Shown: in pieces, positions 19,656 through 63,678 of the stretch
Numbering within the stretch: the stretch's first letter is position 1
Layout: each line of letters begins with the position of its first letter
Source: Macrostomum hystrix
Lineage: Eukaryota > Animalia > Platyhelminthes
Direction of reading: 5' to 3'
Assembly (NCBI GenBank): GCA_950097015.1
Contig: CATNEN010000024.1
Span: 4,898,001-4,962,000, forward strand
DNA: 64,000 bases
Notes under the pieces: generated by a model
Told to the model about the DNA's origin: nothing
The model's database searches: none
Seen by the model: only the letters and a program-made list of their open reading frames with translations
Program-made: the position numbers and the translations under genes

Positions 19656-19664
19656 GTCTGTCTA

Positions 19665-19743
<79 letters not shown>

Positions 19744-19752
19744 GTCTGTCTA

Positions 19753-19843
<91 letters not shown>

Positions 19844-19852
19844 GTCTGTCTA

Positions 19853-19913
<61 letters not shown>
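19432..19913. repeat. 13-mer GGTGTCTGTCCTT array grading into a (TCTG)n microsatellite
   Basis: 13-mers from about 19432 to 19570, then (TCTG)n with TCTA interruptions. Confidence 0.97.
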
Positions 19914-19914
<1 letters not shown>

Positions 19915-20577
19915 CTGAAGATCCACTCGAGCTATTTCATCAAAGGCTGGGACATGGCTGGTGGCTGGGCTCAGGGAAAGTTGACCGTTCGCTCGTCAGG
20001 CTCAAAAGTAGATAGGATGAATGAGATGAGGAGAAATATTCCCTTGGGAAGATGAATCTAGTGCGCTGTAGGCTGTGGGGGCGCCGTAATTTAGTTGGCC
20101 TCAATCAGGTCCCTAACCCCGCCCCCGCAACCCCCTCCCAGATTCTTCAGAGCTGCCCGCTTCAAGTCGGGCCGGCGATTCCTCCTTTCCTAGAAATCGC
20201 ATTTCTTCCCATTTCCCCTCCCGTGCGCAGCTCCCATCCATGGCAGCGCTGCCTGCTCGTTTGACATCACAATCCCCCTAGCAAGGTTGTAGAGATGGGA
20301 TTTCAGCCATGCGGAGGGTATCAACCTGACGCTGGGAGGCCAATTAAAAGAACTTTTTTAACACGGACTAACACGGCCCGAATTGGTTGGCCAAAGACAG
20401 TTGCGATTCAATTGGCAATCAGGGGGGGGCGGGCGGGCGTTCTTGGGCTCGAATTGTAACTCGATTTCATAATCTATTTTCGAGCGGCAGCTATCGTTCG
20501 CAGTCCACGTTCTCGGAATTTTAATGATCGAGGCTCGCCCCCATTGACTATCCTGAGGCAATTCGCGCACCTCCCAA

Positions 20578-24300: not shown

Positions 24301-24764
24301 ATATTTATTCATCAATTTCTGATCTGTAAAGCTAGCCCTTGCAGGCCTGTATGTTGGGCACCTGGTTCCTTGCTTGCTGATTTCTGTCTCTCCCCCACTC
24401 ACTTTCGCACAATTTTTTTGTCTCGTCAATGGCCTAATTAACACGATCGATGGGTAGGGGGTAGGGCAGGCGTGGTTTTTTATAGTCTGTAAACCATTGG
24501 GCTAAGGTATATTATGATATGTCTATTGCGTTCGTGTAGTACGCGATGAAAATCCTGGGCTTTTGGAATCCGGAGGGAATGCTGGATGCGAGCGAGGAAG
24601 GGGGGCAGGAAGGATACATAAGCTAATAAACTGACGCTTGCTAATGGGAACAGGGAACTGTAAGCTGTCAGGTTGCATTACTGATATGAGAGATTTCCGC
24701 GTCTGAACTGCCGCTGCTGCTTCTGCCGCACGCTCGCGAAATACCAATAGGGAGTCAGGAGCAT

Positions 24765-25780
24765 GAGGATAGAGGAGAGATGAGAGAGGAGAGATGGGAG
24801 ATGAGAGAGGAGAGATGAGAGAGGAAAGATGGGAGATGAGAGAGGAAAGATGAGAGAGGAGAGATGAGAGAGGAGAGATGGGAGATGAGAGAGGAGAGAT
24901 GAGAGAGGAGAGATGGGAGATGAGAGAGGAGAGATGAGAGAGGAGAGATGGGAGATGAGAGAGGAAAGATGAGAGAGGAGAGATGGGAGATGAGAGAGGA
25001 GATATGAGAGAAGAGAAATGAGAGAGGAGAGATGGGAGATGAGAGAGGAGAGATGGGAGATGAGAGTGGAGAGATGAGAGAGGAGAAATGAGAGAGGAGA
25101 GATGGGAGATGAGAGATGAGAGAGGAGAGAGGAGAGAGGAGAGATGAGAGAGGAGAGATGGGAGATGAGAGTGGAGAGATGAGAGAGGAGAAATGAGAGA
25201 GGAGAGATGGGAGATGAGAGATGAGAGAGGAGAGAGGAGAGAGGAGAGAGGAGAGATGAGAGAGGAGAGATGAGACAGGATAGATGAGAGAGGAGAGATG
25301 AGAGAGGAGAGGGGAGAGAGGAGAGATGAGAGAGGAGAGATGAGAGAGGAGAGAGGAGAGAGGAGAGATGAGAGAGGAGAGGGGAGAGAGGAGAGATGAG
25401 GGAGGAGAGATGAGAGAGGAGAGATGGAAGATAAGAGAAGAGAGGAGAGGGGAGAGAGGAGAGGGGGAGAGAGTAGGGGGTAGAGAGGAGAGGGGGGAAA
25501 GAGGTGAGCGGAGGAGAGGAGAGAGGATAGATGATAGAGGATAGATGAGAGAGGAGAGATGAGAGAGGAGAGAGGAGAGAGGAGAGATGAGAGAGGAGAG
25601 ATGAGACAGGAGAGATGAGAGAGGAGAGATGAGAGAGGAGAGGGGAGAGAGGAGAGATGAGGGAGGAGAGATGAGAGAGGAGAGATGGGAGATGAGAGAG
25701 GAGAGGAGAGAGGAGAGGGGGAGAGAGTAGGGGGTAGAGAGGAGAGGGGGAAAGAGGTGAGCGGAGGAGAGGAGAGAGGG
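24765..25780. repeat. Polypurine (GA-rich) tract, GAGAGGAGAGATGA-like units
   Basis: About 1 kb, almost entirely A/G with sparse T. Confidence 0.95.
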
Positions 25781-26837
25781 ACGAATAAAGAGACTGGCTA
25801 AAGAGTATATGTAGAAGAAAGAATGTAGAGGAGAAAAGTCGTTATACTGTATAATGGGAGCAGAAAAAAAGTGAATGTAAGCTAGAAAACGGTTTAAGAA
25901 ATCAAAAGAAAGAAGCCAGATGATGTCGGATGATTGGGCAGATAACGGAAATAAGGGATAATAGAGAAGGAGAGAACGGAAGTGGTGGCAAAAAATAGCC
26001 ATTGAGAACTGGGATAAGTGCGACGTCAAATAGATGTAGCGGTTGCTGTGGTCACCGCTGGCCATTCATGCTTTGGACAGTCATAGCCCAAAGTGCTGTC
26101 CAGTTCTGCGTGTCTTGCTGGAACTCTTGCATGTCGCTTTTCTACAAGAATCCCAAAATTCAGCGAGTCTGTGACGGCTCTTGAGACTGCCTGACACTGT
26201 CTCACTGCTCAACTATTTGTCTCAGCTAAGAAATCATCTTGCTCGCGCTCTGGTCTAGCTCGAATCTGGGACTTGGGGGTTCATTTCGGCCGGCGAAGGA
26301 TTTCAACTCATCAGGCCAGTGGGGACTTGTGCCCCATCAGCTGAGGGGGGATAAGTGGTCACTTGTCCTCGACGGGAAATTTCGACTGTGAAATTCGCCT
26401 ACAAGCACAAAGAATTGACAGCGTGGGATAATGGGAAGATAAATGGGGATCGATTGGGAGTGCGGGCGAGGAGAAGAAATCGGCGAGTAATGGGAGAACT
26501 GTATTTGTGAGGGGATAACTCTCAAATTGTGTAGCATTATTGCTAGTTGTCTGTGGATCAAGGAAGGCTGCGTACAGTTTAGCACTTTGTTGCTGCAAAA
26601 AAGCGACTAAGTTTAGGCCCGGATCCGTCATCCAGCGAGGCAGCATTTCTTGGAAAACTAATTGCTGGAACCTTTGAAGTGGTGTGGGCCTTTGAATTTG
26701 ACGCGCGCTTTTACAATCGGATGGATTGTGACAGCCAGAACTGGGAGGTTTCTGAAAGCACTTTAATCTCGAACTAAACTGGGTCAGATAATTGCGCGAA
26801 TCATAGAGCATTTTGGATTTGAGCAATTTTTTATCTG

Positions 26838-27200: not shown

Positions 27201-28137
27201 TTAGTTACGTAAGCATGCTTGGCTACTTGCAGTAGCTCATAAAAAGAAGGTCGTTTAGAAGTTTTATAAGCTTTTGAAATTCTTTCAGATGATTGTAGTT
27301 AAATATTTATTGCGAGCGAATTAGCACTGCCTTCCATCTGTTTCTGTGCTTCTCAAACAGGCGCTAATTTTGAGCACTGTCAATTGTTCATTTTTGTTGT
27401 ATGCAATATCTTACACAGTTGGTTAAGAAATATTTGCACAGCTGTGCATGGAGCGTTTGCTGGCTTTACTCAAGGGCGAGAAACCTACAGCTGACAATGC
27501 ATCTTTCCGCCTGAGATTGCTTGCTAAAGATAGGAATAGATTATTATTGTGTGAGTCACTTGTTTCTAATCTAAGAAATTACGAGCCTTAAGGAGGATAA
27601 GTGTGTGGCAAGGCTATAAGGAAGGTTGGTGGTTGAGTATAGCCGGCAGCTTAAATGTTAGTTATGGCGAGACTCGTAAAATGAGTTTGAGTAGGTTGAG
27701 TTCGCCAAGGAGTAGTGGCAATTAGAGGCAGGGTTTTAAGAATGAAAATATTTCTTTCAGCAAAGAGAAGCGTATAGAGCAGGGTCGAGGCTGAGAAGGC
27801 AGGCATGTCGTAGAGTCGTAGATGTTGGTTAGAGAGATGGAGAGACAGAGAGACAGGTATCGCGGGGTTGGCGCTTCTGGTTGGAAAGACAAAAAGGCCA
27901 CGCAACACATTCTAAAGATGAAAATAAACTATAATAGAAACTAAAATAGAAAGACTGCCGACCTAATGCCGACAGCTGCATGGCTGGGGTTGGTGGCTGA
28001 TGGTCGGACATTTGGAAAGATTCTTTTAAATTGTTTAAAGCAAAGCTAAAAGGAGAGTTTAACTGAACTGGGCTCAACCTGCTTTTGAAACAGCGCCAAT
28101 TTTATTTTACTCAGATTGAAGCGATTTGAAGCGATTA

Positions 28138-31100
28138 ATGATGTCAGCACAGATGGAAGCCACAGCGACTTGCCTAGTGCTGATCGCTTTTGGGCTCCCG
28201 ACCGGGGCTCGAGCTCAGGACCTCACACCGGGAGCGGCGGCCGGAGTTGCATTCGTTGTAACTTTCGTCGTCTGCCTGTGCGTCTGTCTCATTGTTGTCT
28301 GCCTGCTGCTGAAGCGACTCCGACTAGCGCAGAGAAGAGGCGAGTCTTGCTTGATGATTTCTATTAAGACCAATGGGGCATTTCAAATACCCACTTGTCG
28401 ATTTGTCGAATGTTTTGGGAGATACGGAAAAGCATAAATGTGGGTATTTGAAATACTATATCTACTGTTGATAGTTCGGCTTCATTTTTGTTATAGCTCG
28501 TACATAAAACCATAAACTTTTTTTTACAAATTTGTTTAAAATTTCGAAGTTATCTAATGATAACAAACATTTTATTCGACTTCTAAGAAAGTGGGTTAGT
28601 AATAATTGCAAGAGGGCTGCGGGCAATGGCCCATCGTTTGGTGACACTAGACCCGCAGCCAGCCGCAGGCAATTCTGCCCATTTCGCTGACTCCTGAGCA
28701 CACACGCACACAGATACTGTACGCAGGCACGTGCTCACACAGGTGTGTACATCTGCCGACTTTCTCATCGTCAGGCAGCTTGTAATGTACGAGAATTTCT
28801 AAATAATAAATGCAGTCACATAATTGAAAAAGCTTCACAATATTTGACGTAGCCCTCATTTCCAACTGCAATTGACAGCCGAAATTTCGCGCGCCTATCG
28901 CGGCGGCGTCGAAAATAGCGGCTTCGACAGGGTCGACAGGGAGACCGGTGCTAGCGCTGGCGGCGGCGGAGGCGCCGGCGGTGCTGTAAGTCGAGTTAAC
29001 GAACGCAGCTCAGCGACAGACACCAGTTCCGTCGTGAGTCATTAATAATAGATAGAATTTTCGATAAAATGCAGTCAAACCAAGCAATGGGCCAGTTGCA
29101 GAAAAACAGTAAACTTGTCTCACTATTAATTAGGTCCAGCCAGTCGGCAAGTCCAGAATTTCTGTGTGCGCCACCAAGTCAGAGGATCTGGCGTTGAAGG
29201 TCAAGCTAATCGACAACATGGCGCTCGTGTCCAAGGACCCGCTGCACAGCTCATTGTGCAGCCGATTGGGCGTCAGAAGCGGTGAGTTCGTCAGAGGTTT
29301 AGCACGGGAGCATGGGAAGCGTTTTGAATAGAATCGACAAAAAATCTGATTTCGCGTCCCGCAGGCGATCGCATTGTCGGATTCCACATTGACCTGACCA
29401 CGGGCGATGCGGAGCCGGAAGCGGAGCTCGTGAGCTTTCTGCTGGGCTTGGTCGGCCACTTCGGCCTGACCGTCGATTTCGAGCGGCGACAACCGTCAAC
29501 GACGACCACCACTCCCGTTGTTCCACCGCGAGAGGCTTCTAGAAGCGGCATCGTGCCGTCCATCGTTGTCTCTGCGTCTACAACAACACCGGCGTCTGAG
29601 GCTGCAGAGGTGGCTCCGGAATCCAAAGCTCGCGCCGCTGCTGCCGCGCCCGCTGCCACCGCGTCTGAGGTGGCGCTTGCAGCAGCGAATTCCGGGACGC
29701 GTCTTCTTCTTGGTCGCATCTGCGGCGGCCCTCTGCACGCGGCCGGCGATCAGTTCCAGCGCGCGCTGCTGACCTCCGAGTGGACGGAGGCGGAGCCCAG
29801 CAGTGACGAATGGGTGGGCGTGAGCGCCGAGCTGATGGTGCGCGAGGAGGAGGACACGCACGCCTACGCGGTGATTGGGGAGGCTTTCGCAGCGCCGGAC
29901 CTGTCCCTAGAGCTGACCGACAACGACGCCAAGAAGACCTGGCGCTCGTTGCCCGGTCATGACCTCGATGCCATCGAGCTGGAGGTGGCGATGGAGAAGC
30001 CAGTCTCCAGTCCGAATTTTCACGCAGCATCGGCTCCTGCGGCGGCGGAGCGGGCCGACAAAATAAGCGACCGCCGCGGCTCTGGTTCGTCCGTTGACAC
30101 CTCGTCTGGCACAGCCAGTACGCAGGTCGAGGTTATGGCACCGAGAGACTTGCTGCGACTGCGGGCAAGCGACGCCGCTGACGGTGGTGGTGACGACGAC
30201 GCCCAGACAACATCGGGAGACGAGGATTTCGAAGAGAGAGACGCTGTGGCCGCGGCGGTGAAGGAGGCGGACAAAGCGGTTTCAAAGTCCATGGTGAAAC
30301 CTGAATTCGAGATAGGAGCGAATTTTGAAATCGCTAATGAGTCTGACGTGAAAACCGACATTGAAGTGCAAGCAGAAGTGGAACTCGACGTCGATGCACA
30401 AGCGGAAGTGGAACTTGACTTTGATGATCAAACGGAAGTGGAACTCGACGTCGATGCACAAGCGGAAGTGGAACTTGACTTCGATGATCAAACGGAAGTG
30501 GAACTCGACGTCGATGCACAAGTTGAAGTGGAACTCGACGTCGATGCACAAGCGGAAGTGGAAGTCGACGTCGATGCACAAGCGGAAGAAGATTTGGAAG
30601 ATTTGGAGTTTGAGCGCGCAGAAAGCATTTTGGAGGCAGAGTCGGAGGCTGACGACATCGAGGAGATTTCCATTGACGATGATACACCGGACACTAGAAG
30701 CCTAGAACCGTCAGCCTTAGCGTCGATGCAACTCAGGACTGAGACTAGCAGCAGTAGCGGCAGCAGCAGAAGAAACAGCAGCAGCGATACCGACGGGTCT
30801 AATCGTCAGCTGGCAGACGCCATACAGCAGGCGGCCCAGGCAGTCGAAAATGAAATTGAGCCTGACGTGGTGGAGGCAGAGGAGATTGTACCGCTGGCGT
30901 CGGGTGGGCAGCAAAGGGAGCCACGGGCAGCACCAGCCTGGGAGAGTCTGGACAACCAGTTGGTGGCAGGTCGACGACGGGAAAATTCGGATCACCAGCT
31001 GGTCCAAGCAGTTCGCTGGGAAAATCTTGAAAATCATTCCGTGCCAGGAAGTGGGTGGAAAAATTTAGACAATCAGCCGGTGCAATCAGGTAATTTTTTG

Positions 31101-35782: not shown

Positions 35783-38700
35783 TCACAGCGCTTGAAACAT
35801 GTTGCTTTTCTCCGAGAACGAAGCCGGAGCCATCTTGACCTGGGTGCGCTTGTTCTTCCCAATTTTGGCCCGCATCTCCTCCAGGCTCGTATTGCCGAGT
35901 GGGTCGCCATTTTTGGCGCCGGCGGCTGCGGCGGCGGATGGGGCAGCGGCAGGTGCCGGTTTCGACTGCGGCGGCGGACTCGGCGCTAGCGGCCGCTGCG
36001 GCGGCGGAGTCGGTGCTAGCGGCCGCTGCGGCGGCGGAGTCGGAGACGGAGGCGGACTCGACTAGGAGGCGGTGGGAGACAGTGCATCATGAGTAATGAC
36101 AGAGCCAGATATACCCTGATTGGAGGTGACTGTGACACCACAGCTCAGGTGATTGGAGGTGATCTGACGGGACAGCGGGGGTGATTAGAGGTAATCTGAC
36201 CGGACAGTGGGGGTGATTGGAAGTGATCTGAACGGACAGCGGGGTGATTGGAGGTGATCTGACCGGACAGCGGAGGTGATTAGAGGTGATCTGACCGGAC
36301 AGTGGGGGTGATTAGAGGTAATCTGACCGAACAGTGGGGGTGATTAGAGGTGATCTGACCGGACAGTGGGGGTGATTAGAGGTAATCTGACGGGACAGCA
36401 GAGGTGATTGGAGGTGATCTGACCGGACAGTGGGGGTGATTGGAGGTGATCTGACCGGACAGCGGAGGTGATTAGAGGTGATCTGACGGGACAGCCTTGG
36501 TGATTAGAGGTCAGACGCCACAGAACAGCCTTAAAGGTGTTCCAAGTTCTGATTGAAATAAAACTGGAATGGCTACTAGCATAACAGCTCACTTGCTGTT
36601 TGCCTATCAAGGTTACACGTGAGAGGGCTTTGTTAAGGTACTCAAATTTCATACATAAACCAGTTGTATGTAACTCTAGGCGCATTAAAATGTAGATTTC
36701 TCAGCTAAGCACACTACACTGTGTTGCGTTGGTCTAAACCTTGCCTTGACTAACACTGTGGAGAGAAAAAGAGAAAGTTAAAATAACTAGCGGAAGAAAT
36801 TTGCACCCAACAGACCTTTTAACATCCATTTCGAATTAACAAATCAGAGCCTTTCAGCAAAAACACGAACAGAAATCACAGTAGCTACACTAAATACATT
36901 ATTCAGCATGCACCAGCCACAGAACAGCACACACGCGCGCGCACATACACCGGGTATTATTTGCCAAACAATAATATCAGACCCCGAGCCTACTCTCCTA
37001 CTCACTATTCTCTCTCTCACTGCTCACGGTTTCGCGCTGAGCTGAAAGAATTGCGGGCGGTAGCATTGAAATTCTAGCAAAGGCAGTAAATCGTATTTCT
37101 TCTCTTATTTGTGTTTTGGATGCAGCTCGGTTTGTCGGGCGGTTTCGGAAAGAAAGATTTCAAATCTCTCTCCTGCCTTTAGTTTGTTCTGCTATTTGCA
37201 TTTCCCACTCACTCACTACAGACGACGCCCATAGTTCTCAATAAGAATAAGAAAGCTATTACTATGTGCTAGTAAATGACAGGGCATAGCCTAATTTGAA
37301 CAAGTACTCAAGTTCTCAGCATTTTCATTGCACATACCATCAGAGCGTGTGTACATTTTATAAGAACACTTGCGCGCTAGACTTAAGTATAATATTTTTA
37401 CTGTTGGTAGACTGCTTCTGAGTACAGGAGATAAGTGTGATGACCATCAAAATGGCTTCTGAGTACAGGAGATAAGTGTGATGACCATCAAAATGGCTTC
37501 TGAGTACAGGAGATAAGTGTGATGACCATCAAAATGGCTTCTGAGTACAGGAGATAAGTGTGATGACCATCAAAATGGCTTCTGAGTACAGGAGATAAGT
37601 GTGATGACCATCAAATAGAGTGATGAGGCGAAATAGAGCCGAGAGTGATGAGGCAAAATGGAAAACTAACTGGTTACCTTGGCAACATCGGGCACCGCAT
37701 AATCTGCTTCGTCAGCTGGCTGAGGCGAGTGCGAGCGGACCGGGGTTCGATTCTCTGCCGAGGGCGACGGCGAGGGCGGCGCAGCGTACTCTACACCGCT
37801 GGACTGCAAATGATAATTAAGAAATTAAACGCACTAATTACATGATGAGGCATTTATCATAAAAATGAAGTACAGCTACAAAAATATGTGCTTTGCTTAG
37901 GCCAAAAAAATTAAATACTAACATGAACTATAATACAAATACGAGCTATAAATAGTAAAGAACAATAATATAAGTATCCAACTATACATGAACCATATAC
38001 TAGTTAATATTAACTAATATAAATAAAAAATGCAACTTAACAATAATCATTCTTACCTCTTCATTTTGAACTGTCTCAGAGACCGTAGGCTCAGTGTCAG
38101 GTGTGGTAAATGTTAAAATGCCCAACATATCACTGTTGATAACAATGCTATGCTCCTTGCAGTACTTGTAGGTCTCATTTGGTGCCACAAGCATAGTCAC
38201 TTGGTTTGGTGTCTCCTTAATCCGTTCAACAACCTTTTGATGACTGAGGTCCTCTATAAGGAAGGTTGAAAGAAATGTGAAATTAAAAATTATTAAATGT
38301 ATGACCAATAACATGGTAAGGAAATTTACGAAATTTTAGTAAAATTAGCTACATTATTTTGTGCATTCTAACCTTGCACTGTTGTAGATCAACATAGCTA
38401 GCTTATACAATTTTACTTGATTACATAAAGCCAAGTTAACAAGATAGTATTTGTGCAACGTGCATGGTACAATATAGCTAGCTAGTTATATATTTCTTTA
38501 TTGTTAAGAAATATCACTTAGCTATCTTAAAAATGAAATTGAAAGTTATATAAAAATCGAAAAATACAATTCTTTCACTTCTCTCATCAAGCCTAAAAAG
38601 TCAAATGGATAACTAATTATATAAATATAAATATATGTTATCTTCAAACCTTTAATTACTAACACAATATTATTTTTTCACTAAAACTAGCTTGCTAATA

Positions 38701-39071
38701 CTAGCTAATATGATAATTCGGTTATTAGGCCTAGCTATTTTATAAGGAACTAACCAACAAAGCAGTAAAACTAATAGTTAACATTTCGACCAAAAAGTCA
38801 TAAAAATATAGTATACATGCAAGCAGTAAATAATTTCTAAGATAATACTTAATAGCTTTACAAACTTACCGACATTTGCACCATTGACTTCGACTAAGAA
38901 GTACTTTGGACCAAGACCACCTGTCTCAGCAGGAGAATTAGGATCTACTTTACCAACATACTGCCCTGGCTTCCCCTTTTCGGCATGAAGATTGAAGCCA
39001 TAACCAGCATATGTCGGCCATTTTTTAAGAGTACAAAGTCTGGGCTGGGGTAAGTGGGATGGAATAGACAT
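35783..39071 (-). CDS. NHERF1: NHERF/EBP50-like scaffold with one PDZ and a C-terminal ERM-binding tail; exons 39071-38870, 38253-38057, 37803-37678, 36061-35783 (267 aa)
   Basis: [44 protein letters not shown]...VEVNGANV|[23 protein letters not shown] is a NHERF-type PDZ. A Pro-rich linker leads to the C-terminus [35 protein letters not shown], which resembles the EBP50 tail. Phases 1,0,0 are consistent. Confidence 0.88.
36115..36512. repeat. Minisatellite, ~32-nt unit GGTGATTAGAGGTGATCTGACCGGACAGTGGG
   Basis: About 12 units in NHERF intron 3. Confidence 0.94.
37415..37615. repeat. 41-nt tandem repeat CTTCTGAGTACAGGAGATAAGTGTGATGACCATCAAAATGG
   Basis: About 5 essentially identical copies. 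Confidence 0.95.
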
Positions 39072-40614
39072 TTTGATTAAGTGCTATACACAAGTGACAA
39101 TGGCGTTCGTGATGTTAAACTTAAGCTGGAGCTCGAGACTGTGACGAATGAATTTGACTGATATTATGCCTGTAGCTACAAGGACAAAAATTTACTAATG
39201 TCACTTTTGTATAACTAGACAGACAAGTGTTCCACACTATTAATTGAAAGGCGTTTTGCCTATCTTTGGATCGGGTTTCTAATGTACATTAAATGAAACT
39301 AAAATTATGACAATGATGTCAGTGGCATAACAAACTACAACTTTTTAAGTCCATGTAAAACTATAATATGCAATAATGAATATATATTCCCCTATTTAAG
39401 ATACTAATTGTCCTGTGTTGTGGTGGTTTTGTTTTTTTACTTCTCTAACAAGACCCGTAAAATCCTTTTTAGATAAGTAGAAATCCGTTTCATGGCAAAA
39501 TGAACGTTATCTTAAACATTAGCCTTGTATTATGTCTAAACCTAATATTTTTTATGTATCCGAATTCGAGACTTCTGATACAAAAGTCATCATTTTACTA
39601 TCTGGCAGCACTTTTAAAAAACCTGATTTGGTATAACTTGTGCAGTTGACTTAAAATAGAAAAATTGATGAATTGATCATATTGTGCACATTAAGGTTAC
39701 TAATTTCAGCAAGCGAACCGGAATATTTCCATAATAGCTGCGTAAAAATAATCTTAAAGAAGCGTTCGGTCGTGTTCGCGCATAAAATATAGTAAATATA
39801 CCATTGACTCACAATATAACTGCATGTGTATGTATTGTGGCTAATCTAATATTTTTTTAAGTAATACTTGCTTTTCATCCACAATGTGCACACATTTTTA
39901 CAGTGGTTATTTATACACTGAAGGGTAAGTTACAGTGTATATTTTAAAGTTTGAGCTCTTGAAGATGACGAAATCAAAACTCTATTTTTACAATAAAACT
40001 AAAGGTGAGGAATTCTAACGCACAATGGCTACATTATTTTCTTAGAAATCATCGTAGAATTTATTGAGCACTGGAGCTGGCTTTTTGACACCAGAATTTC
40101 GAAAGCTGCAGGGGTTAATGGGAGATTAGAAGGCCATTAGAGCTTCAGAGAACCTTGGCGATTATAGCTAATAGCTTTGCTATTTGTCAACTTTCGATTA
40201 ATTCGCGGTCAGAGAGGACAAGTTTACGCTCGTAGTTGGAGGAGTGAAACTAACACAAACAGCCTCTAAGATCACGCTATAGCCAGAATTTACTAATCTG
40301 GAATGATGGCAACAACAACTTGTGTATTTGTAAGGGAAATCGAAGGTGCGATTTCCGCCTCTGCGTACGCAGTACGCGTGCGGTCTGTCTATGCGGGATC
40401 GTGCCAAATTTACTTACATTTTTGGCTTTATCTACGAGCTACGATGTGAAAGCTAGCCTTTAACTTTTGTATACAACCTATGCAACAATTGTGAGGAATC
40501 ATCTAATCTTGGGTAAATCATTTATTCGGTTTGGCACTGAATTAAAAATGCTACATTCTGCAGTTTATGCATTTTGCTAGTTTTTCGATTTGTGTCTCTA
40601 ATGGATTTTGTTCG

Positions 40615-46883: not shown

Positions 46884-49800
46884 ATGCAGCCCATTGTGAC
46901 AACCCTGTGGGCCGCACTAACGGCTGCGCTGGTGTCCAGTAAGTACAGATTTACAGACAATTGTTATAGATTTACCGACAATTGTTATAGATTTACAGAC
47001 AATTGTTACAGATTTACAGACAATTGTCAAAGATTTACAGACAATTGTCAAATATTTACAGACAATTGTCAAACATTTACAGACAATTGTCAAAAATTTA
47101 CAGAAAATTGTTAAATATTTACAGACAATTGTCAAAGATTTACAGAAAATTGTTATAGATTTATGGATATTATGGATCCACTACAGATGTACAGATATCC
47201 ACTACAGATGTACAGATATCCACTACAGATGTACAGATATCCACTACAGATGTACAGATATCCACTACAGATGTACAGATATCCACTACAGATGTACAGA
47301 TATCCACTACAGATGTACAGATATCCACTACAGATGTACAGATATCCACTACAGATGTACAGATACCCAATTCAGATGTACAGATATCCACTACAGATGT
47401 ACAGATATCCACTTGTAAGGAATCTGCAGTTGTCAGGAATAGCTAAAATACAATGCCGATAACCAAAAAGCCTTTGACAATATCATAGGGCACATTCATA
47501 GTCCTGAAATATGCTCAAACACAGCACTACAAGCATTCTACTGAGTGCTGAATGAGAGTTCCCATAATCTTATAAGCAAATAACTGCCTATAGCAAATAG
47601 TCAACTCAAGTTGAAAGTGTTAAAGAAAAATTCCTTCCAGTCATCAAGTGTTTGCCATCCGAAATACTAAGCAAGTGCTGCACACACGCTCACTCAGCAA
47701 CAGAGAGTGCACACTGTAACACAATGGGTTAGGGTAAACTTTTCGGGTATGAAAAGGCGTTGCAAAAGTTTCAGGCAATTTGTTTTACGACTCGGGTTGA
47801 AACGGCAACAGAAGGTGAAAGGAGACCGATAGGGGGGAAGGCGGCCCATTTGCTCCTAGTAGCAGCTGCCGGGTTGGCGAGAGACCGCTCTATTGCGCCC
47901 ACTGTTAAGTTAGTTTCCTATAATCTACTGTAAGAATGCAGAAACGGACTGACATTCAGAGGCTGGAGGCCGATTCATAAAATTCTAGCTTGGGGTGGGG
48001 GCCGCGGCTGTGTCAAAATGTGCACGGAAACACACCGGCTTACGCATGCGCGCACACACACAACGGACCTGGACACTGGGCGCCTGGCTAAGTAACAAAT
48101 TCTGTTGATTCAGACTGAAGCTCTTCTGAAGACCATAACTTTTATATGGAAAGAAGCGATGCTATCGCAACTTTTTAGTAGAATTATAAACGGAGACAGC
48201 GGAGGTAGCGGAGGTAGCGGAGGCAGTGGAGGCAGTGGAGGTAGCGGAGGTAGCGGAGGCAGTGGAGGTAGCGGAGGCAGTGGAGGTAGCGGAGGTAGCG
48301 GAGGTAGCGGAGGTAGCGGAGGTAGCGGAGGTAGCGGAGGTAGCGGAGGTAGCGGAGGTAGCGGAGGTAGCGGAGATAGCGGAGGTAGCGGAGATAGCGG
48401 AGGTAGCGGAGATAGCGGAGATAGCGGAGGTAGCGGAGATAGCGGAGGTAGCGGAGGTAGCGGAGATAGCGGATGTAGCGGATATAGCGGAGGTAGCGGA
48501 GGTAGCGGATGTAGCGGAGATATCGGAGATAGCGGAGGTAGCGGAGGTAGCGGAGGTAGCGGAGATAGCGGATGTAGTGGATGTAGCGGATGTAGCGGAG
48601 ATAGCGGATGTAGCGGAGATAGCGGAGATAGCGGAGGTAGCGGAGGTAGCGGAGATAGCGGATGTAGTGGATGTAGCGGATGTAGCGGAGATAGCGGATG
48701 TAGCGGAGATAGCGGAGATAGCGGAGATAGCGGAGATAGCGGAGGTAGCGGAGGTAGCGGATGTAACGGAGATAGCGGAGGTAGCGGAGGTAGCGGAGGT
48801 AGCGGAGGTAGCGGAGATAGCGGAGGTAGCGGCGGAACAGAGAAACAGAAAGGTGGAACATAAATAGCCCGCCAAAAGTCTGTTGTCGCTAGACAAAGCT
48901 TTGTTAATGCCAATCAGTCTTCCAAACCGAATGCGGATTATTTCTCCGCTTAGCTTCACCCCTCCAATCCAATCCGCAACCTTCAGCAGTGCAGCATAAT
49001 CCCAACAGCCTGAGCACTCCCTTATCCCCAATCGTCCAGGTCGTTTTGCTCCCTAACCTAGGGGAAGAGACAAGAGCGGTTGGAGCAGGCGGATTTCACT
49101 TAGGTTAAGGAATTTAGCAGCGCCAATTGGGGGGTTGGTGTAGGATTGGAGCATTTTTCACTCGGTGGGGCGAGCCGCCTTCGGTCATTGGCATTCAATT
49201 ATAGAAGCCGTTTATTTATTACCTGGCTGGCTGGCCGGCCTCTGTTGGTCAGAAGTGGGCCACTTGTCAGGCCGCACACACAACGGATAGTTGACGATTG
49301 GAAGTCCACAGCTTGAAGCCTGGAGCAAATGGCGCAGTCATGTGAAGTGACAGCTTCTCGCGAGGGATTAAATCGAATTTTCTTAAAAATGCATAGCTAT
49401 TTTTTTATGATCTACGAGTGTTAAAGTGAAAATATCGATATTTAGGGCTCACTTTTTGGAGTAAGGGTAAAGAGAGCGATCTCTCTCTAAAGTGAGAGTG
49501 ACAGCGAGAGTGAGAGAGAGTGACAGCGGGAGTGACAGAGAGAGTGACAGCGAGAGTGAGAGAGTGACAGCGGGAGTGAGAGAGAGTGACTGCGAGAGTG
49601 ACAGAGTGACAGCAAGAGTGACAGCGAGAGTTTGAGAGAGTGAGTGATAGCGAGAGTGACAGCGAGAGTGACAGAGAGAGTGACAGCGAGAGTGAGAGAG
49701 TGACAGCGAGAGTGAGAGAGTGACAGCAGGAGTGACAGAGAGAGTGACAGCGAGAGTGAGAGAGTGACAGCGAGATTGAGAGAGAGAGTGACTGCGAGAG

Positions 49801-57600: not shown

Positions 57601-59042
57601 TTGTTTCTCGCAGACCGCTGATGCGTGGCGTATGGCGGGGGCGGTGGCGTCAACAGCAGAGAAAAAAGCAGCAGCAGCAGCCGTTGCTGAGGTCGAGCTC
57701 TTATAGTTGGAGGGTAAGGATGCTGCTGCTGCTGCTGCTGCAGCTTCCTTGGCAGTCAATCAGGCTTGAACATCTGCGACAGAAGCGCCCGCCTTTCGCC
57801 AAGCAGTGCTCTGACGCATCAGCAAATACCTCCTCTTGTCCTTCCCGCCCACATTCCGGTGCTATTTTTTTCCGCGTTGAACATTTTCCTGCTTCTAGGC
57901 GACTCGAGGCTCCAGGCTCGCTGAGAGAGGCGAGAAAATCTGAGCGCCATCGCAGTCACGTTTACAGCCGACGCAACTAATGCACCTTGGGCTATTGGAG
58001 AGATTTCTTAAGCCCTCGTCCTGGTCCGCGGGTTGTTTTCTGGCCTCTCATTTTATCTGTTCGGTTCGGTCTGAAAAAGCTCGGCCTATAAGAATTGCAC
58101 TAATTGGTTGACAGTTTAAATCGGCACGGACCCCACCATCAGTTGATCTTGAACAAGCAGATTTTTTTGTTCGAAGAAAGGGCGAGGCGGCGAGGCGGGA
58201 AGAAACGCTAGCGTTGCTCTCTTCAGTTTTCGAAGCCCTGTCATTCGCGATGATGCCCCGCTGATTATCGGCTCGGTCTGACTGTTTCTTAGAAAGAAAC
58301 TAATCCGCCGTCTGCAGTCTCCAATCCGCAGTCTAAAGCGACCTTCGTCTGTCTTCGGCGTCAAACAAAACCCGAGGGGGTTAGAGGGAGACGGGTAGAG
58401 AGCCTGGGACAGGTGCCTCTGGCATTTGCCTATCCCCATGCATAATCTCCCACACCTAGGCTGCCGAATCCCACAGGGGATAGAACTTGGGGATCGCCCC
58501 CGCTGGGGAGTAAGATTTCCGGGGCGCGAATTCGAGGCGCTAATCGGCGGCCTTGACCCGGCTAATGCTCCTGTAATTATGATTACTATTGCTATTAATT
58601 ATTGAGGATCATCGTTTTAAAGGTCGCGAAAATTTTAAAACTCGAACCCTCCCCACATACACTCTCACACACTCACAGTGTCTATGGCCGGGCATCACGA
58701 AAGGCGCCTGCTGTACTATCTGTTCGACCCGGCCAATCGCACCAATCCGCTGGAGGTGCACAATCCGATGGAGCGCCCGGTAAAAAATGAGTCCAATGTG
58801 CTCTACGTCTGGTTCAAAGTGTCACTGCAGCAGATCATCGACCTGGTGAGAGGCCTGGCTGTGGCGTTCAATGTCACAGGCTTTGTCTTGACTCTATTAT
58901 AGTAACATTTATATCGATGGAAAACACAGAGAGACAGACAAACAGACTGATTGACAGACAGACAGACAGACAGACAGACACAGACAGACAGACAGGCAGA
59001 CAGACAGACAGAGACACACAGATGAGAGACAGACAGTTAGAT

Positions 59043-59136
<94 letters not shown>

Positions 59137-59137
59137 T

Positions 59138-59216
<79 letters not shown>

Positions 59217-59217
59217 T

Positions 59218-59292
<75 letters not shown>

Positions 59293-59320
59293 TGACAGAC
59301 AGACAGACAGACAGACAGAA

Positions 59321-59399
<79 letters not shown>

Positions 59400-59460
59400 G
59401 AGACACACAGACACTATGACAGACAGACAGACTGACAGACAGACAGAGAGACAGACAGAC

Positions 59461-59537
<77 letters not shown>

Positions 59538-61423
59538 TGCAAGCAACAGCCTTACCTCCGTTTGTATGACGAGCCAGCAGTCTAAAATGAAGCTCACATG
59601 TTTACAGCCCTTTACAGGCTTTGCTTTGGAAACATTTCCTTCTAAAAAATGCAATTTTCTTCACCGAGAACCACAGCAAAGTTGGAACTATCGCTAGGGT
59701 GCCAAGATGGCCGCTGCTTATTGCATTTCCGCCACATGACGGCGGTTTCAAAGTCCAGCTGAACAGTTTGGACGATTTTCAACCGATCCGTCATCAATAT
59801 TGTCTGCTGCACAGCAAACACCAATATCCATGGCTTCTGCCGGGTCTGCTCCATCCATCCCCACACTTTTCCCCTCACTAATTGCACCGGCTAGAGTCTG
59901 GATACACACTCCAGTGTCATCTAGATACACACTCCAGAATCATCTAGATACACACTCCAGTATCATCTAGATACACACTCCAGTGTCATCTAGATACACA
60001 CTCCAGTGTCATCTAGATACACACTCCAGTGTCATCTAGATACACACTCCAGTGTCATCTAGATACACACTCCAGTATCATCTAGATACACACTCCAGTA
60101 TCATCTAGATACACACTCCAGTATCATCTAGATACACACTCCAGTATCATCTAGATACACACTCCAGTGTCATCTAGATACACACTCCAGTGTCATCTAG
60201 ATACACACTCCACTAAAACTTGAACCTGCAGGATGAAAAGAAGCAAATTTTGATAACAAACTTCTGGCTGGATCAAGTGAGACAAACTCGGATTGTCAGC
60301 TCTGAACACTGCCTGGAAATATGACCCGGATGTAGATCCCATTCAGTTATCCTATTGTGCTTGCTAGCGATAAAATGGTCTCTATCACTGTGCGTACTTG
60401 ATAAACAAAACTTGCCATATTCACTTTCATTTCTGTTATTTCTTGTTGTGCACAAATTTCGTAACCCAGTTCAACTGAATTCTCAGACTAAGAATTTTAG
60501 GCTACGTAATTTGTGTAACGTTGCTGCTCTGAAAGGTAGGCATTGATAAACACACTGATAGGCATTGATAAACACACAGGTAAGCATTGATAAACACACT
60601 GATAGACATGAATAAACATACTGATAGGCATTCATAAACACACTGGTGGGCATTGATAAACTCACTGATAGGCATTGATAAACACACTGATAGGCATTGA
60701 TAAGCACGCTGGTATACATGTAAAAACACACAGATAAACATGAATAAACACGCAGATAGACATGAATAAACACACAGATAAACATGAATAAACACGCAGA
60801 TAGACATGATAAACATACTGATAGACATTGATAAACACAATGGTGGGCATGAATAAAGACACTTATAGACATTGATATACACACTGATAGGCATTGATAA
60901 ACACTGCACTGATAAGCATTGATAAACACACAGTGACATGAATAAACACACATGTAGACGTGAATAAACACACTGATAGGCATTGATAAACAGACTAACA
61001 GACTAGAACTCAGAGGTATTTAGAAATACGGATGATCTAATCATTTCGGTCACTTATAAGTGTTTTGATTCACCAAAAAGTATTCTGAAAAATCCAATCT
61101 AACGCACAGCAGCCTATGAATATACTCCGACTATACTACTATTATCCTGTCTATCCTATTTTATTTCTATTCCAACGCAGGACGAGAAAAATCAGATTCT
61201 GTTCTCAAATATCTGGCTGGATTTGGTAAGCCTTTGCCAGCCATGAGTTATAGGCTGTCTAGCTTATATTTAAATAATAAATCAACAAATCTAAGCCTAC
61301 TGGTTTTTGCTTTATGAGAATGCTATCGACTTTTTTGAAGAGCGCTTTTTTATATTTATTTTTCAAAGTACATCATGGCTACTTACAGTAGCATGTATTT
61401 GCATTCTTTAAGCATGCCGAAAC

Positions 61424-61462
<39 letters not shown>

Positions 61463-63168
61463 ATACTCTCAGGACTTAAAGGGCTTGTAGCCTAGTGGTT
61501 AGAGCCTTGTACTCATGACTTAAAGGTCGATGGTCGTTTAGCAAGATAGTTAAGTTAACTCTGCATTGCCTTCAGAGCTTCTGTTAAATTGGTACCAGCA
61601 TTATCTGGGTTGTAGTACACATTAGCTAGTGTAATCAAATATTATTAATTATTATTATTAATAATTGAAACACTCACACACACTCACACTCATATACATC
61701 TTGGTACTTTTAACTAAAATAAATGTCTTTGACTGATCTGAAATACTTCTTCAGTTTCATAAGCTAAATGAGCATTTCACATAAACACTATTTGTCATAT
61801 TACTAAGAGTAGTTTTAATTGCGCTTTGCATTGCTATTAACCGCAACTTGCCTTGCTTGCCTAATTGTGCTAATCGGTTTTTCAATAGACTTTAGTGTCC
61901 GGTAAACTGAAGTTTGTAAACAAGTAGACTGTAAACAACGATTATAATTGATAGTAGCTCGTAGCTCGTAATTACCTATTTTTTCCCACAGACTTGGCAC
62001 GACTATCACTTCATGTGGGATCCGAAGGATTTCGGTGGCATCACAAAGATCAACATCGATCCGAAACGTGTTTGGCGACCCGATATCCTACTGTATAACA
62101 GGTGCGATCACTTTTTTCGGAGTAGGAATTCTGAATTATTGGGAGTATGAGCGATCCCTTATAACATACCTCTAGATTGCACTGAGGAATTTCTGAGCAG
62201 TTTTTGGATGCGTTAATAGAATTCGGGATTTTAGTGAACCGGATCGCTAGATCATTGGGATTCGTAGGTAAGGGAATTGGATTTGTAGATAAGTGAATGG
62301 GATTTGTAGATAAGTGAATGGGATTCGTAGATAAGTGAATGGGATTTGTAGATAAGTGAACGGGATTTGTAGATAAGTGAATGGGATTTGTAGATAAGTG
62401 AATGGGATTCGTAGATAAGTGAATGGGATTCGTAGATTAGTGAATGGGATTCGTAGATAAGTGAACGGGATTTGTAGATAAATGAATGGGATTTGTAGAT
62501 AAGTGAAGGGGATTTGTAGATAAGTGAACGGGATTTGTAGATAAGTGAATGGGATTTGTAGATAAGTGAACGGGATTTGTAGATAAGTGAATGGGATTCG
62601 TAGATAAGTGATTGGGGTTTTAGATAAGTGAATGGGATTCGTAGATAAGTGAACGGGATTTGTAGATAAATGAATGGGATTTGTAGATAAGTTTATGGGA
62701 TTTGTAGATAAGTGAATGGGATTTGTAGACAAGCGAATTGGATTTGTAGATAAGTTAATGGGATTTGTAAATAAGTGAATATTATTGTTGAATAAATTAA
62801 GAATTCGAACCAATAAAATTTAGGAATTAAATTTTTTATGAACCAAAACAGCGCTGATGAGAAGTTCGATGGCACCTACCCCACAAATGTGGTGATCGAG
62901 TACACAGGCAACGTGAACTTCATCCCGCCTGGCATGTTCCGCTCAACCTGCAAGATCGACACAACCTGGTTTCCGTTCGACACCCAGGTTTGCAAGCTGA
63001 AGTTCGGCTCCTGGTCGTACGATGGTGGCACGCTGGACCTCAGGCTGAAATGCTCAGACCAGGCTTTAAATACGACTGAAATGCGACTCAGCGATCCTAA
63101 AAACTGCTCAGAGATTGGCGAGGCTGATTTGGAGACCTATGTGTCTAGCGGCGAGTGGTACCTGGAAA
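46884..63168 (+). CDS. CHRNA7: Alpha7-like nicotinic acetylcholine receptor subunit, 5' part: exon 1 46884-46938, exon 2 58679-58845, exon 3a 60232-60276 / 3b 61181-61225, exon 4 61992-62101, exon 5 62852-63168; continues beyond the window
   Basis: Signal peptide [18 protein letters not shown]; ERPVKNES...SLQQIIDL; DEK.QIL..N.WLD.; TWHDY...[18 protein letters not shown]; Cys-loop [15 protein letters not shown]; FGSWSYDG; GEWYL. Exon sizes 55/45/110 and phases equal those recalled for human CHRNA7. The loop C vicinal Cys and TM2 are outside the window, so alpha status and ion selectivity are not shown. Linking exon 1 across 11.7 kb is inferred. Confidence 0.88.
46945..47412. repeat. Two adjacent 21-nt minisatellites (TTACAGACAATTGTTATAGAT; TACAGATGTACAGATATCCAC)
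   Basis: They start ~7 nt after the nAChR exon 1 donor. Confidence 0.95.
48190..48836. repeat. 9-nt repeat GCGGAGGTA/GCGGAGATA/GCGGATGTA
   Basis: About 70 units; open in several frames; intronic. Confidence 0.96.
49490..50075. repeat. GA-rich compound repeat (GAGAGTGACAGC-like)
   Basis: Tandem degenerate units. Confidence 0.92.
50431..50540 (+). repeat. Unclassified ~110-bp dispersed element, copy 2
   Basis: Matches 28668-28779 with few differences. Confidence 0.85.
50655..52215. repeat. 30-nt minisatellite TCCG(C/T)CAT(CCG/GAA)CCAGTTTTGGGGTGTCTCA with higher-order structure
   Basis: About 52 units in four main variants. Confidence 0.98.
53015..53320. repeat. 21-nt minisatellite TCTCTCCGTCTCACCTCTTTG
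   Basis: About 14 units. Confidence 0.95.
53950..54512. repeat. 23-mer GGGAGTGGAGAGACTGGGATTAA (~5 units) followed by 12-mer GGGAGACAG(A/G)CA
   Basis: Direct reading; the 23-mer is the reverse complement of the 55163-56927 unit. Confidence 0.94.
55163..56927. repeat. 23-nt minisatellite TTAATCCCAGTCTCTCCACTCCC
   Basis: About 76 units with an internal 368-bp (16-unit) duplication. Confidence 0.98.
58925..59536. repeat. (ACAG)n microsatellite in nAChR intron 2
   Basis: Direct reading. Confidence 0.97.
59905..60212. repeat. 23-nt minisatellite ACACTCCAGT(G/A)TCATCTAGATAC
   Basis: About 13 units ending ~20 nt before the exon 3a acceptor. Confidence 0.96.
60232..60276 (+). CDS. nAChR exon 3a ([15 protein letters not shown])
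   Basis: cctgcag| 45 nt |gtgaga, phase 0/0. Confidence 0.85.
60535..60992. repeat. Degenerate ~22-nt minisatellite ATTGATAAACACACTGATAGGC
   Basis: Lies between exons 3a and 3b. Confidence 0.92.
61181..61225 (+). CDS. nAChR exon 3b ([15 protein letters not shown])
   Basis: ccaacgcag| 45 nt |gtaagc, phase 0/0. Confidence 0.88.
61425..61461. repeat. (CA)n microsatellite
   Basis: Direct reading. Confidence 0.95.
61481..61612 (+). mobile_element. tRNA-derived SINE, copy 3 (internally deleted, lacks B box and 3' half)
   Basis: gggcttgtagcctagtggttagagc...actcatgacttaaaggtcg...ttaactctgcattgcc...ctgttaaattggtaccagc matches copies 1 and 2. Confidence 0.8.
62268..62780. repeat. 21-nt minisatellite GGGATTTGTAGATAAGTGAAT
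   Basis: About 24 units in nAChR intron 4. Confidence 0.96.
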
Positions 63169-63279
63169 GTGAGTTGTCGAGAAAAAAAATACGAAGTTGT
63201 GTACTCAAAGTAGCCGGATTTGAGTAAAACTATAATATGTTTCAGAAATATGGAACTTCAATGTAAAAGCCCCAATACC

Positions 63280-63678
63280 AGGATTCTGATCCCAGGATTC
63301 TGATCCCAGGATTCTGATCCCAGGATTCTGATCCCAGGATTCTGATCCCAGGATTCTGATCCCAGGATTCTGATCCCAGGATTCTGATCCCAGGATTCTG
63401 ATCCCAGGATTCTGATCCCAGGATTCTGATCCCAGGATTCTGATCCCAGGATTCTGATCCCAGGATTCTGATCCCAGGATTCTGATCCCAGGATTCTGAT
63501 CCCAGGATTCTGATCCCAGGATTCTGATCCCAGGATTCTGATCCCAGGATTCTGATCCCAGGATTCTGATCCCAGGATTCTGATCCCAGGATTCTGATCC
63601 CAGGATTCTGATCCCAGGATTCTGATCCCAGGATTCTGATCCCAGGATTCTGATCCCAGGATTCTGATCCCAGGATTC
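63280..63678. repeat. Perfect 14-nt repeat CAGGATTCTGATCC
   Basis: About 28 identical units. Confidence 0.98.

What the first reader, a model, noticed from the sequence alone, without database searches (positions are those of the whole stretch)
60232..61225. Tandemly duplicated, apparently mutually exclusive loop D exon in an alpha7-like nAChR
Seen: two 45-nt, phase 0/0 exons with canonical splice sites lie between exon 2 and exon 4, encoding [15 protein letters not shown] and [15 protein letters not shown]. They differ at 5 of 15 residues and at 6 synonymous sites, with no indels or stops, which suggests both are under purifying selection. Established: this exon encodes loop D of the complementary ligand-binding face, and insect nAChR alpha6 has alternative exons 3a/3b at this same position. 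Inference: this non-insect, probably flatworm, gene makes pharmacologically distinct isoforms by the same switch, through deep ancestry or convergence. The exons are ~900 nt apart and both preserve frame, so neither steric exclusion nor NMD would enforce exclusivity; a regulated mechanism such as RNA pairing would be needed. The ORF track misses both exons.
Basis: partly seen in the sequence, partly recalled or inferred. Interest (0 to 1): 0.85.

Follow-up and report, generated by a model that had tools for sequence, protein, structure and literature searches.

The report
Flatworm nicotinic receptor: duplicated loop-D exon
A Macrostomum flatworm alpha7-type acetylcholine receptor gene carries two conserved copies of the 45-base exon that forms part of the ligand-binding site, as insect alpha6 genes do, but only the second copy has so far been seen in transcripts.

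Summary
Two 45-nt, phase-0 exons with AG/GT sites lie between exon 2 and exon 4 of an alpha7-like nAChR gene: 3a at 60232-60276 and 3b at 61181-61225.

The strongest new evidence is comparative. The syntenic Macrostomum lignano locus (L001) has the same 3a/3b layout. Constitutive exons there differ at dS about 1.1 and the introns no longer align. Yet 3a is amino-acid identical, with 6 nucleotide changes, all synonymous. So 3a is a translated, selected exon, not a relic or an assembly artefact.

Spliced contigs from four runs of one study all read exon 2 > 3b > 4 > 5. No 3a junction was seen, so 3b is the default exon. Mutually exclusive use of 3a remains an inference. No conserved RNA-pairing element was found.

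The duplication is not unique to insects and this worm. Tandem exon-3 copies also occur in nemerteans (RefSeq isoforms use one copy each), Priapulus, ticks and barnacles. Trematodes, Lingula, an oyster and the sister Macrostomum paralogue have one copy.

Deep ancestry versus convergence stays open; the peptides slightly favour a lineage-specific duplication. I class this as a new member of a known kind.

The scan had already noted further exon pairs in this gene (s1-348902, s1-348890) and in a paralogue (s1-337213).

The parts
46884..46938 (+). Exon 1 (coding part): signal peptide [18 protein letters not shown] plus 1 nt, donor gtaagt
   Evidence: tblastn of P0153 residues 1-18. Sequence read. 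The phase fits exon 2, which starts with 2 nt.
58679..58845 (+). Exon 2, N-terminal helix and beta1 strand, ending ...SLQQIIDL
   Evidence: Its last 30 nt precede 3b in the RNA contigs of all four runs (loose ends before 61181). It is 94% aa identical to L001 19630-19791.
58926..59537 (.). (ACAG)n microsatellite, about 154 copies, in the intron directly after exon 2
   Evidence: TRF. A repeat of the same unit lies at the same place in L001.
60232..60276 (+). Exon 3a, upstream and divergent copy: [15 protein letters not shown] (beta1-beta2 loop plus beta2 strand / loop D)
   Evidence: It is aa-identical in L001 21732-21776 with 6 synonymous and 0 non-synonymous changes, while the introns do not align. 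It was not seen spliced in RNA contigs.
60277..61180 (+). 904-nt intron between 3a and 3b, containing a degenerate 22-nt minisatellite (60537-60996)
   Evidence: It does not align to the 1751-nt counterpart in L001.
61181..61225 (+). Exon 3b, downstream and canonical copy: [15 protein letters not shown]; the exon used in the observed transcripts
   Evidence: Joint 61225>61992 with exon 2 sequence upstream in one contig in each of four runs. L001 23528-23572 differs by 5 synonymous and 1 non-synonymous change. The same exon type is found in all Macrostomum paralogues.
61992..62101 (+). Exon 4 (110 nt): [12 protein letters not shown]...RPDILLYN
   Evidence: It is 100% aa identical in L001.
62852..63168 (+). 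Exon 5 (317 nt): loop A, the Cys-loop (C-13 residues-C), loop B and a long loop F. The gene continues beyond the window.
   Evidence: Its first bases follow exon 4 in the RNA contigs.

Best explanation
The gene encodes an alpha7-type nicotinic receptor subunit of a Macrostomum flatworm. Its 45-nt exon for the beta1-beta2 loop and beta2 strand (loop D, with the complementary-face tryptophan) was duplicated in tandem, and both copies are kept as coding sequence.

Exon 3b is the canonical copy, shared with all paralogues, and is the default exon in whole-animal RNA. Exon 3a is a derived copy. It has Asn to Lys in the otherwise invariant DEKNQ gating loop, Ile/Phe changes on the strand around the tryptophan, and a terminal Gln.

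I infer that 3a replaces 3b in a minority of transcripts, probably in particular cells or stages. That would give a receptor with altered agonist pharmacology and/or gating, as insect alpha6 3a/3b do.

Shown: the anatomy, selection on both copies, and use of 3b.
Inferred: that 3a is spliced in, that it excludes 3b, and the functional consequence.
Unknown: how exclusivity is enforced. The slightly weaker polypyrimidine tract of 3a suggests activator-dependent inclusion rather than a structural lock.
For: - Exact exon anatomy with AG/GT sites.
- The Pfam profile leaves exactly 15 positions (41-55) between exon 2 and exon 4.
- The syntenic M. lignano locus L001 has the same order: exon 2, 3a, 3b, exon 4, exon 5.
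- Window versus L001: constitutive exons give dN 0.035 and dS 1.08. Exon 3a has 6 nt changes, all synonymous. Exon 3b has 5 synonymous and 1 non-synonymous change.
- blastn aligns only the exons plus a few flanking bases, and 3a is 88.7% identical, like the other exons.
- 3a keeps the residues that are constant across all 23 exon-3 peptides compared: D, E, K, Q, W.
- Transcripts reading exon 2 > 3b > 4 > 5 occur in 4 runs.
- Nemertean RefSeq isoforms use one copy each.
- The insect precedent is PMC1919356.
- The polypyrimidine fraction is 0.55/0.64 for 3a against 0.73/0.77 for 3b.
Against: - No transcript, contig or database protein with 3a was found.
- The only RNA piece over 3a is unspliced. 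It covers 60243-60394 at depth 2.7 and runs through the donor.
- The RNA data are assembled contigs from one study at depth 14-31, which drop rare isoforms, so this absence is weak evidence.
- Inclusion of both copies, or of neither, keeps the frame.
- A tick alpha6 transcript with both copies exists (PMC13578988).
- No mechanism for exclusivity was identified.
Confidence: 0.62

Rival explanations
1. Exon 3a is a cassette exon included together with 3b. This adds 15 residues rather than swapping them, as in Ixodes ricinus alpha6A or Bombyx type III transcripts.
For: Both exons are 45 nt and phase 0, so co-inclusion keeps the frame. Co-included forms are documented in a tick (PMC13578988) and in Bombyx (PMC1919356). 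3b was present in every transcript seen.
Against: The Pfam domain has room for only one copy. 3a retains every fold-critical residue of 3b, as expected if it substitutes for 3b. The tick co-included form gave no functional receptor in oocytes. No 60276>61181 joint was seen.
Confidence: 0.13
2. Exon 3a is not translated. It is either a decaying duplicate or a conserved non-coding decoy that influences splicing of 3b.
For: 3a was never seen spliced. It is absent from the annotated M. lignano protein P0153 and from all database proteins. The sister paralogue does without it.
Against: At dS about 1 the flanking introns are unalignable. Yet 3a has 39 of 45 identical bases, intact splice sites and open frame, and all 6 changes are synonymous in the receptor frame. 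That pattern is specific to translated sequence.
Confidence: 0.1
3. The pair is an assembly artefact, produced by merged haplotypes or paralogues.
For: Macrostomum genomes carry several near-identical gene copies. The introns here are full of tandem repeats.
Against: An independent M. lignano assembly has the same two exons in the same order with unique flanks. The copies differ at 14 of 45 nt and sit in unrelated intron sequence. The paralogue transcript seen in the RNA has a different exon 3 and different flanks.
Confidence: 0.01

Closest known systems
Insect nAChR alpha6 (Drosophila Dalpha6 and orthologues), alternative exons 3a/3b
   Same: The exon is the same one: 45 nt, phase 0/0, encoding DEKNQ...W, the beta1-beta2 loop plus loop D. 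Both have two tandem copies, and both genes belong to the alpha7-like group (PMC1919356). The M. lignano counterpart also has a duplicated TM2 exon, as insect alpha6 has exon 8a-c.
   Different: Both insect copies are documented in mRNA; here only 3b is. The arthropod a/b signatures (I.T versus L.I at positions 6 and 8) are not shared by the flatworm copies. Flatworm 3a is an outlier with Lys in the DEKNQ loop. Orthology of the duplication is not supported.
Ixodes ricinus alpha6 exon 3a/3b (PMC13578988)
   Same: It is a non-insect animal with tandem exon-3 copies, and 3b is present in all transcripts.
   Different: In the tick, 3a was found only together with 3b, and that form was non-functional in oocytes. 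Whether the flatworm behaves this way is unknown.
Nemertean alpha7-like genes (Lineus longissimus XP_064652926 versus XP_064652936; Tubulanus polymorphus XP_074649611 versus XP_074649612)
   Same: These are spiralians with two tandem 45-nt exon-3 copies. In Lineus (L004) they lie at 63458-63502 and 63606-63650. The predicted isoforms contain one copy each.
   Different: The Lineus copies are 103 nt apart and differ at 2 residues; the three Tubulanus differences lie in the 15-residue exon-3 segment. The Macrostomum copies are 904-1751 nt apart and differ at 5. The nemertean isoforms are database models; I found no paper describing them.
Vertebrate CHRNA7 exon 3 and trematode, brachiopod and oyster alpha7-like genes
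   Same: They have the homologous 45-nt exon at the same position in the domain.
   Different: They have a single copy and no alternative.

Membership tests
Cys-loop receptor, nicotinic alpha7-like subunit | Neurotransmitter-gated ion-channel ligand-binding domain | tested here: met
   Pfam PF02931 on exon 5 (E 7.6e-23), exon 4 (1.8e-10) and exon 2 (3e-3).
Cys-loop receptor, nicotinic alpha7-like subunit | Cys-loop with two cysteines 13 residues apart, and closest solved relative alpha7 | tested here: met
   [15 protein letters not shown] in exon 5. The 13 best PDB sequences are all alpha7, E about 1e-24. The gene groups with protostome alpha7-like genes in the tree.
Cys-loop receptor, nicotinic alpha7-like subunit | Loop C vicinal cysteines (alpha-type subunit) | tested here: inconclusive
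   This exon lies beyond the window end. The syntenic M. lignano gene has YDCCPYPF and YDCCPHPF in its two loop-C exon copies.
Tandem mutually exclusive exon pair of the insect alpha6 exon 3a/3b type | Two adjacent homologous exons of equal length and phase with their own splice sites | tested here: met
Tandem mutually exclusive exon pair of the insect alpha6 exon 3a/3b type | Both copies maintained by purifying selection | tested here: met
   Window versus L001: 3a has 0 non-synonymous and 6 synonymous nt changes. 3b has 1 non-synonymous and 5 synonymous codon changes. Background dS is 1.08 and the introns are unalignable.
Tandem mutually exclusive exon pair of the insect alpha6 exon 3a/3b type | Mature transcripts contain exactly one of the copies, and each copy is used | tested here: inconclusive
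   3b-only transcripts were found in 4 runs of one study. No 3a junction and no 3a+3b joint was seen. The data are contigs at depth 14-31 and would miss a minor isoform.
Tandem mutually exclusive exon pair of the insect alpha6 exon 3a/3b type | The duplication is the same evolutionary event as in arthropods | tested here: inconclusive
   Flatworm 3a matches any other exon 3 at no more than 10 of 15 residues, and no arthropod a/b signature is shared. The sister paralogue and trematodes have one copy. Fifteen residues give no power for a tree.
Mutually exclusive splicing by competing RNA structures (docking site / selector, as in Dscam1 and 14-3-3 xi) | A conserved intronic docking sequence complementary to a selector next to each variable exon | tested here: not met
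   Only two short inverted repeats were found, at chance level. No intron block is conserved with L001 except a marginal 19-mer (E 0.41), which has no complementary partner in either locus. The best inter-intron duplexes are loose and differently placed in the two loci. Two sequences cannot exclude a purely structural conservation.
Mutually exclusive splicing by steric hindrance or by frame/NMD | An intron between the copies too short to splice, or a frame shift when both are included | tested here: not met
   The intron is 904 nt here and 1751 nt in L001. Both exons are 45 nt and phase 0.

The most novel reading that the evidence does not exclude
The exon-3 pair is a survivor of an alternative-exon system already present in the alpha7-like receptor gene of the last common protostome ancestor. 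That system may also have included the TM2 and loop C/M1 pairs found in the same gene. Under this reading it was retained in arthropods, priapulids, nemerteans and Macrostomum, and lost repeatedly elsewhere. It would be one of the oldest conserved mutually exclusive splicing events known in a neurotransmitter receptor.
Probability: 0.25. Interest if true: 0.7.

Novelty: new member of a known kind. Interest (0 to 1): 0.45.

Why it matters
Alternative loop-D exons are how insects obtain pharmacologically distinct alpha6 receptors from one gene, and alpha6 is the target of spinosad. A flatworm gene has a selected second copy of the same exon. In the M. lignano counterpart, tandem pairs also exist for the loop C/M1 and TM2 exons, giving up to eight combinations. 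This shows that modular diversification is not an arthropod peculiarity. Together with the nemertean and priapulid cases, it gives a concrete data set for asking whether such splicing is ancient or repeatedly reinvented. It also flags missed 45-nt exons in current Macrostomum gene models. Macrostomum is a laboratory model with transgenesis, so isoform-specific expression and function can be tested.

Tried and rejected
- RNA evidence. I chose this stretch to avoid the long ACAG and 23-nt repeats, so exon 2 junctions appear only as loose ends.
- 3a-containing proteins. Searches with P0001 residues 30-245 and P0153 residues 21-232, plus cluster members, found none. The database does not seem to hold proteins from these RNA runs, so this blank means little.
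- A third protein search with a short junction peptide was considered and not run, because the expected yield was very low for its cost.
- RNA pairing. The inverted-repeat scan, the conserved-block search and the RNAduplex scans of both loci gave nothing convincing.
- A tree of the 15-residue peptides was rejected as powerless; an identity matrix is given instead.
- Loci for the other Macrostomum paralogues (P0001, P0003) and for Tubulanus (P0159) were not on record. The status of exon 3 in Macrostomum paralogues C and D is therefore unknown.
- Structure prediction of the two isoforms was not run.

Full report
**1. What is in the window**

Reading 58600-62300 and translating it confirms the finding exactly.

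- Exon 2 is 58679-58845 and ends ...SLQQIIDL|gtgaga.
- Exon 3a is 60232-60276 (cag|...|gtgaga) and encodes [15 protein letters not shown].
- Exon 3b is 61181-61225 (cag|...|gtaagc) and encodes [15 protein letters not shown].
- Exon 4 is 61992-62101.
- I added exon 5 at 62852-63168.
- I added the signal-peptide exon 1 at 46884-46938.

The two copies share 31 of 45 nt. Five codons differ non-synonymously and six synonymously.

Exon 5 matches human alpha7 best among solved structures, at E about 1e-24. Exons 2, 4 and 5 hit Pfam Neur_chan_LBD. Exon 2 ends at profile position 40 and exon 4 begins at 56. The domain therefore needs exactly one 15-residue exon between them.

A six-frame motif scan of the whole window finds only these two matches.

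By my own residue count on the alpha7 sequence, the exon corresponds to mature alpha7 residues 44-58. Established knowledge of alpha7 places the beta1-beta2 gating loop and the beta2 strand, with the loop-D tryptophan 55, in this segment.

**2. Organism and counterpart locus**

The nearest proteins are Macrostomum lignano alpha7-like subunits. This agrees with earlier notes of the scan.

The closest protein is P0153 (PAA48279.1). It lies on contig NIVC01004192.1, fetched as L001. L001 has the same layout:

- exon 2 at 19630-19791
- exon 3a at 21732-21776
- exon 3b at 23528-23572
- exon 4 at 24604-24711
- exon 5 at 25646-25960

A PDZ-domain gene lies about 7-8 kb upstream of exon 1 in both loci. 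The two loci are therefore syntenic counterparts. They are either orthologues in two Macrostomum species or old duplicates; I could not tell which.

**3. Selection**

Between the window and L001, the constitutive exons give dN 0.035 and dS 1.08. blastn aligns only the exons plus 3-7 flanking bases, together with the ACAG repeat after exon 2. The introns have diverged beyond alignment.

Against that background, 3a is 88.7% identical in nucleotides and 100% identical in protein, and its 6 nucleotide changes are all synonymous. Exon 3b has 5 synonymous and 1 non-synonymous change (Ser/Ala). The splice sites of both copies are kept.

This is the signature of translated, constrained exons. It rules out a decaying duplicate. 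Because it comes from an independent assembly, it also rules out a merged-haplotype artefact.

**4. Transcripts**

I laid them on 60213-62255.

Each run has one contig with the joint 61225>61992. The end of exon 2 lies immediately before 61181, and the start of exon 5 lies after 62101. The transcript therefore reads exon 2 > 3b > 4 > 5, at depth 14-31.

No contig joins 3a to anything. One 152-nt piece (60243-60394, depth 2.7) runs unspliced through the 3a donor, like other low-level intron pieces.

A second contig in all four runs matches 3b with 4 mismatches but has other flanks (...QQIIDV / TWSDYHFKW). It is the transcript of a paralogue, probably the counterpart of M. lignano P0372.

Contigs drop rare variants. 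The result therefore says that 3b is the major form, not that 3a is silent. The annotated M. lignano protein also uses 3b. No 3a-containing protein exists in the databases searched.

**5. Mechanism**

3a keeps the residues that are constant across all 23 exon-3 peptides compared (D, E, K, Q, W). This is what one expects if it takes the place of 3b in the fold.

3a differs from 3b at five positions:

| Position in exon | 3a | 3b | Location |
|---|---|---|---|
| 4 | Lys | Asn | DEKNQ gating loop; Asn is invariant in the 21 other peptides compared |
| 8 | Ile | Phe | Same face of the strand as the tryptophan |
| 9 | Thr | Ser | Strand |
| 11 | Phe | Ile | Strand |
| 15 | Gln | Leu | Gln is also seen in the non-alpha7-type subunits P0007 and P0354 |

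A switch should therefore alter both the complementary binding face and the coupling to the pore. This is an inference.

Neither steric hindrance nor a frame shift can enforce exclusivity. The intron between the copies is 904 nt here and 1751 nt in L001.

I found no docking/selector arrangement:

- The two short inverted repeats are at chance level.
- The only candidate conserved intron block is a 19-mer at 59786-59804 (E 0.41), and it has no complementary partner.
- The best inter-intron duplexes are loose and differently placed in the two loci.

The 3a acceptor has a somewhat poorer pyrimidine tract than that of 3b. This fits regulated, activator-dependent inclusion.

Co-inclusion remains possible. 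It occurs in Bombyx (PMC1919356) and in Ixodes ricinus, where the double form was non-functional (PMC13578988).

**6. Distribution**

| Taxon | Exon-3 copies | Evidence |
|---|---|---|
| Insects, ticks, a barnacle | Two | Tandem read-through models or isoform pairs |
| Priapulus caudatus | Two | L006 26093-26137 and 26495-26539 |
| Lineus longissimus (nemertean) | Two | L004 63458-63502 and 63606-63650; RefSeq isoforms X1/X4/X6 versus X2/X3/X5 carry one copy each |
| Tubulanus polymorphus (nemertean) | Two (inferred) | Isoforms X1 and X2 differ at three residues, all in exon 3 |
| Schistosoma haematobium | One | |
| Two further trematode-type loci | One | |
| Lingula gene | One | |
| Crassostrea virginica | One | |
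| Macrostomum paralogue B (L002) | One | Only 73 nt between exon 2 and its 3b-type exon |

In a protein tree the four M. lignano paralogues form one clade (100/98). Gene A, which has two copies, is sister to gene B, which has one (100/99). The flatworm genes sit inside a spiralian alpha7-like group.

Flatworm 3a resembles no foreign copy better than it resembles its own 3b, at 10 of 15 residues. Arthropod a/b signatures are absent from both flatworm copies.

This slightly favours a duplication within the Macrostomum lineage, that is, convergence. An ancient pair with many losses needs a similar number of events and cannot be excluded.

The M. lignano counterpart gene also has tandem pairs of the loop C/M1 exon (27211-27408 and 28060-28257) and of the TM2 exon (28917-29006 and 29532-29621). 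These match the scan's notes for the sequence just beyond this window. They also parallel insect exon 8 and a Lineus alternative region at residues 207-270.

**7. Literature**

The insect alpha6 3a/3b exons and the tick case are published. Full-text searches found no paper that links mutually exclusive exons of nicotinic receptors with flatworms, nemerteans or lophotrochozoans. They also found no docking/selector work on alpha6.

**8. Verdict**

The exon pair is real, conserved and homologous in position to the insect alpha6 alternatives. Exon 3b is the default. Use of 3a, and its exclusivity, remain to be shown.

It is a new, non-arthropod member of a known kind of receptor diversification. 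Interest is moderate. It would rise if 3a transcripts are found, or if the pair proves ancestral to protostomes.

Noticed in passing
window 58926-59537; L001 about 19792-20483: A 612-nt (ACAG)n microsatellite begins about 80 nt after the exon 2 donor. A repeat of the same unit sits at the same place in the M. lignano counterpart, although the rest of the intron does not align. It could be a persistent microsatellite or a splicing-factor binding platform.
   Followed up: partly
window 58096-58127 (L001 19106-19137); window 59786-59804 (L001 20998-21016): These are the only short intronic blocks shared with L001. One is a 32-mer about 550 nt upstream of exon 2 (29 of 32 identical, E 1.5e-6) that contains TAATTGG. 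The other is a marginal 19-mer in the intron before 3a (17 of 19, E 0.41). No complementary partner was found for the 19-mer.
   Followed up: partly
window 59897-60212, 60537-60996, 62256-62780, 63278-63678: Every intron of this gene segment holds a long minisatellite: 23 nt x 13.7, 22 nt x 21, 21 nt x 25 and 14 nt x 28.6 (the last at 100% identity). The 23-nt array ends 20 nt before exon 3a.
   Followed up: no
L001 27211-27408 / 28060-28257 and 28917-29006 / 29532-29621: The M. lignano counterpart gene has tandem pairs of the loop C/M1 exon and of the TM2 exon. Together with 3a/3b this gives up to 8 combinations. The database models P0003 and P0156 wrongly include both copies in series.
   Followed up: partly
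L004 (Lineus longissimus), proteins P0179, P0358-P0361: RefSeq isoforms of the nemertean gene differ in exon 3. They also differ in an alternative exon 4 (MWNAYNVQWDPAEFG versus MWNDYHLRWNPKNYG) and in an alternative region at residues 207-270, which is loop C/M1.
   Followed up: partly
window 62039: All four RNA runs read T where the window has C. By my own count from the exon 4 frame it falls on a third codon position of a Gly codon, so it would be synonymous; that count was not run in a tool. It is most simply a strain or allele difference, and it is not an A-to-I type change.
   Followed up: no
window 63040-63140 (exon 5): The loop F region is about 20 residues longer than in human alpha7 (...[37 protein letters not shown]...). 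The insertion is shared by the M. lignano paralogues.
   Followed up: no
proteins P0156/P0373 (667 aa) versus P0372 (682 aa): M. lignano database models of paralogue C differ by exactly 15 residues. The 45-nt exon 3 is missing from some models, so small exons of this family are often missed in annotation.
   Followed up: no
window 38134-39073: Exons of a PDZ-domain gene lie upstream of the receptor gene, about 81% identical to L001 2411-3089. This shows conserved synteny.
   Followed up: partly
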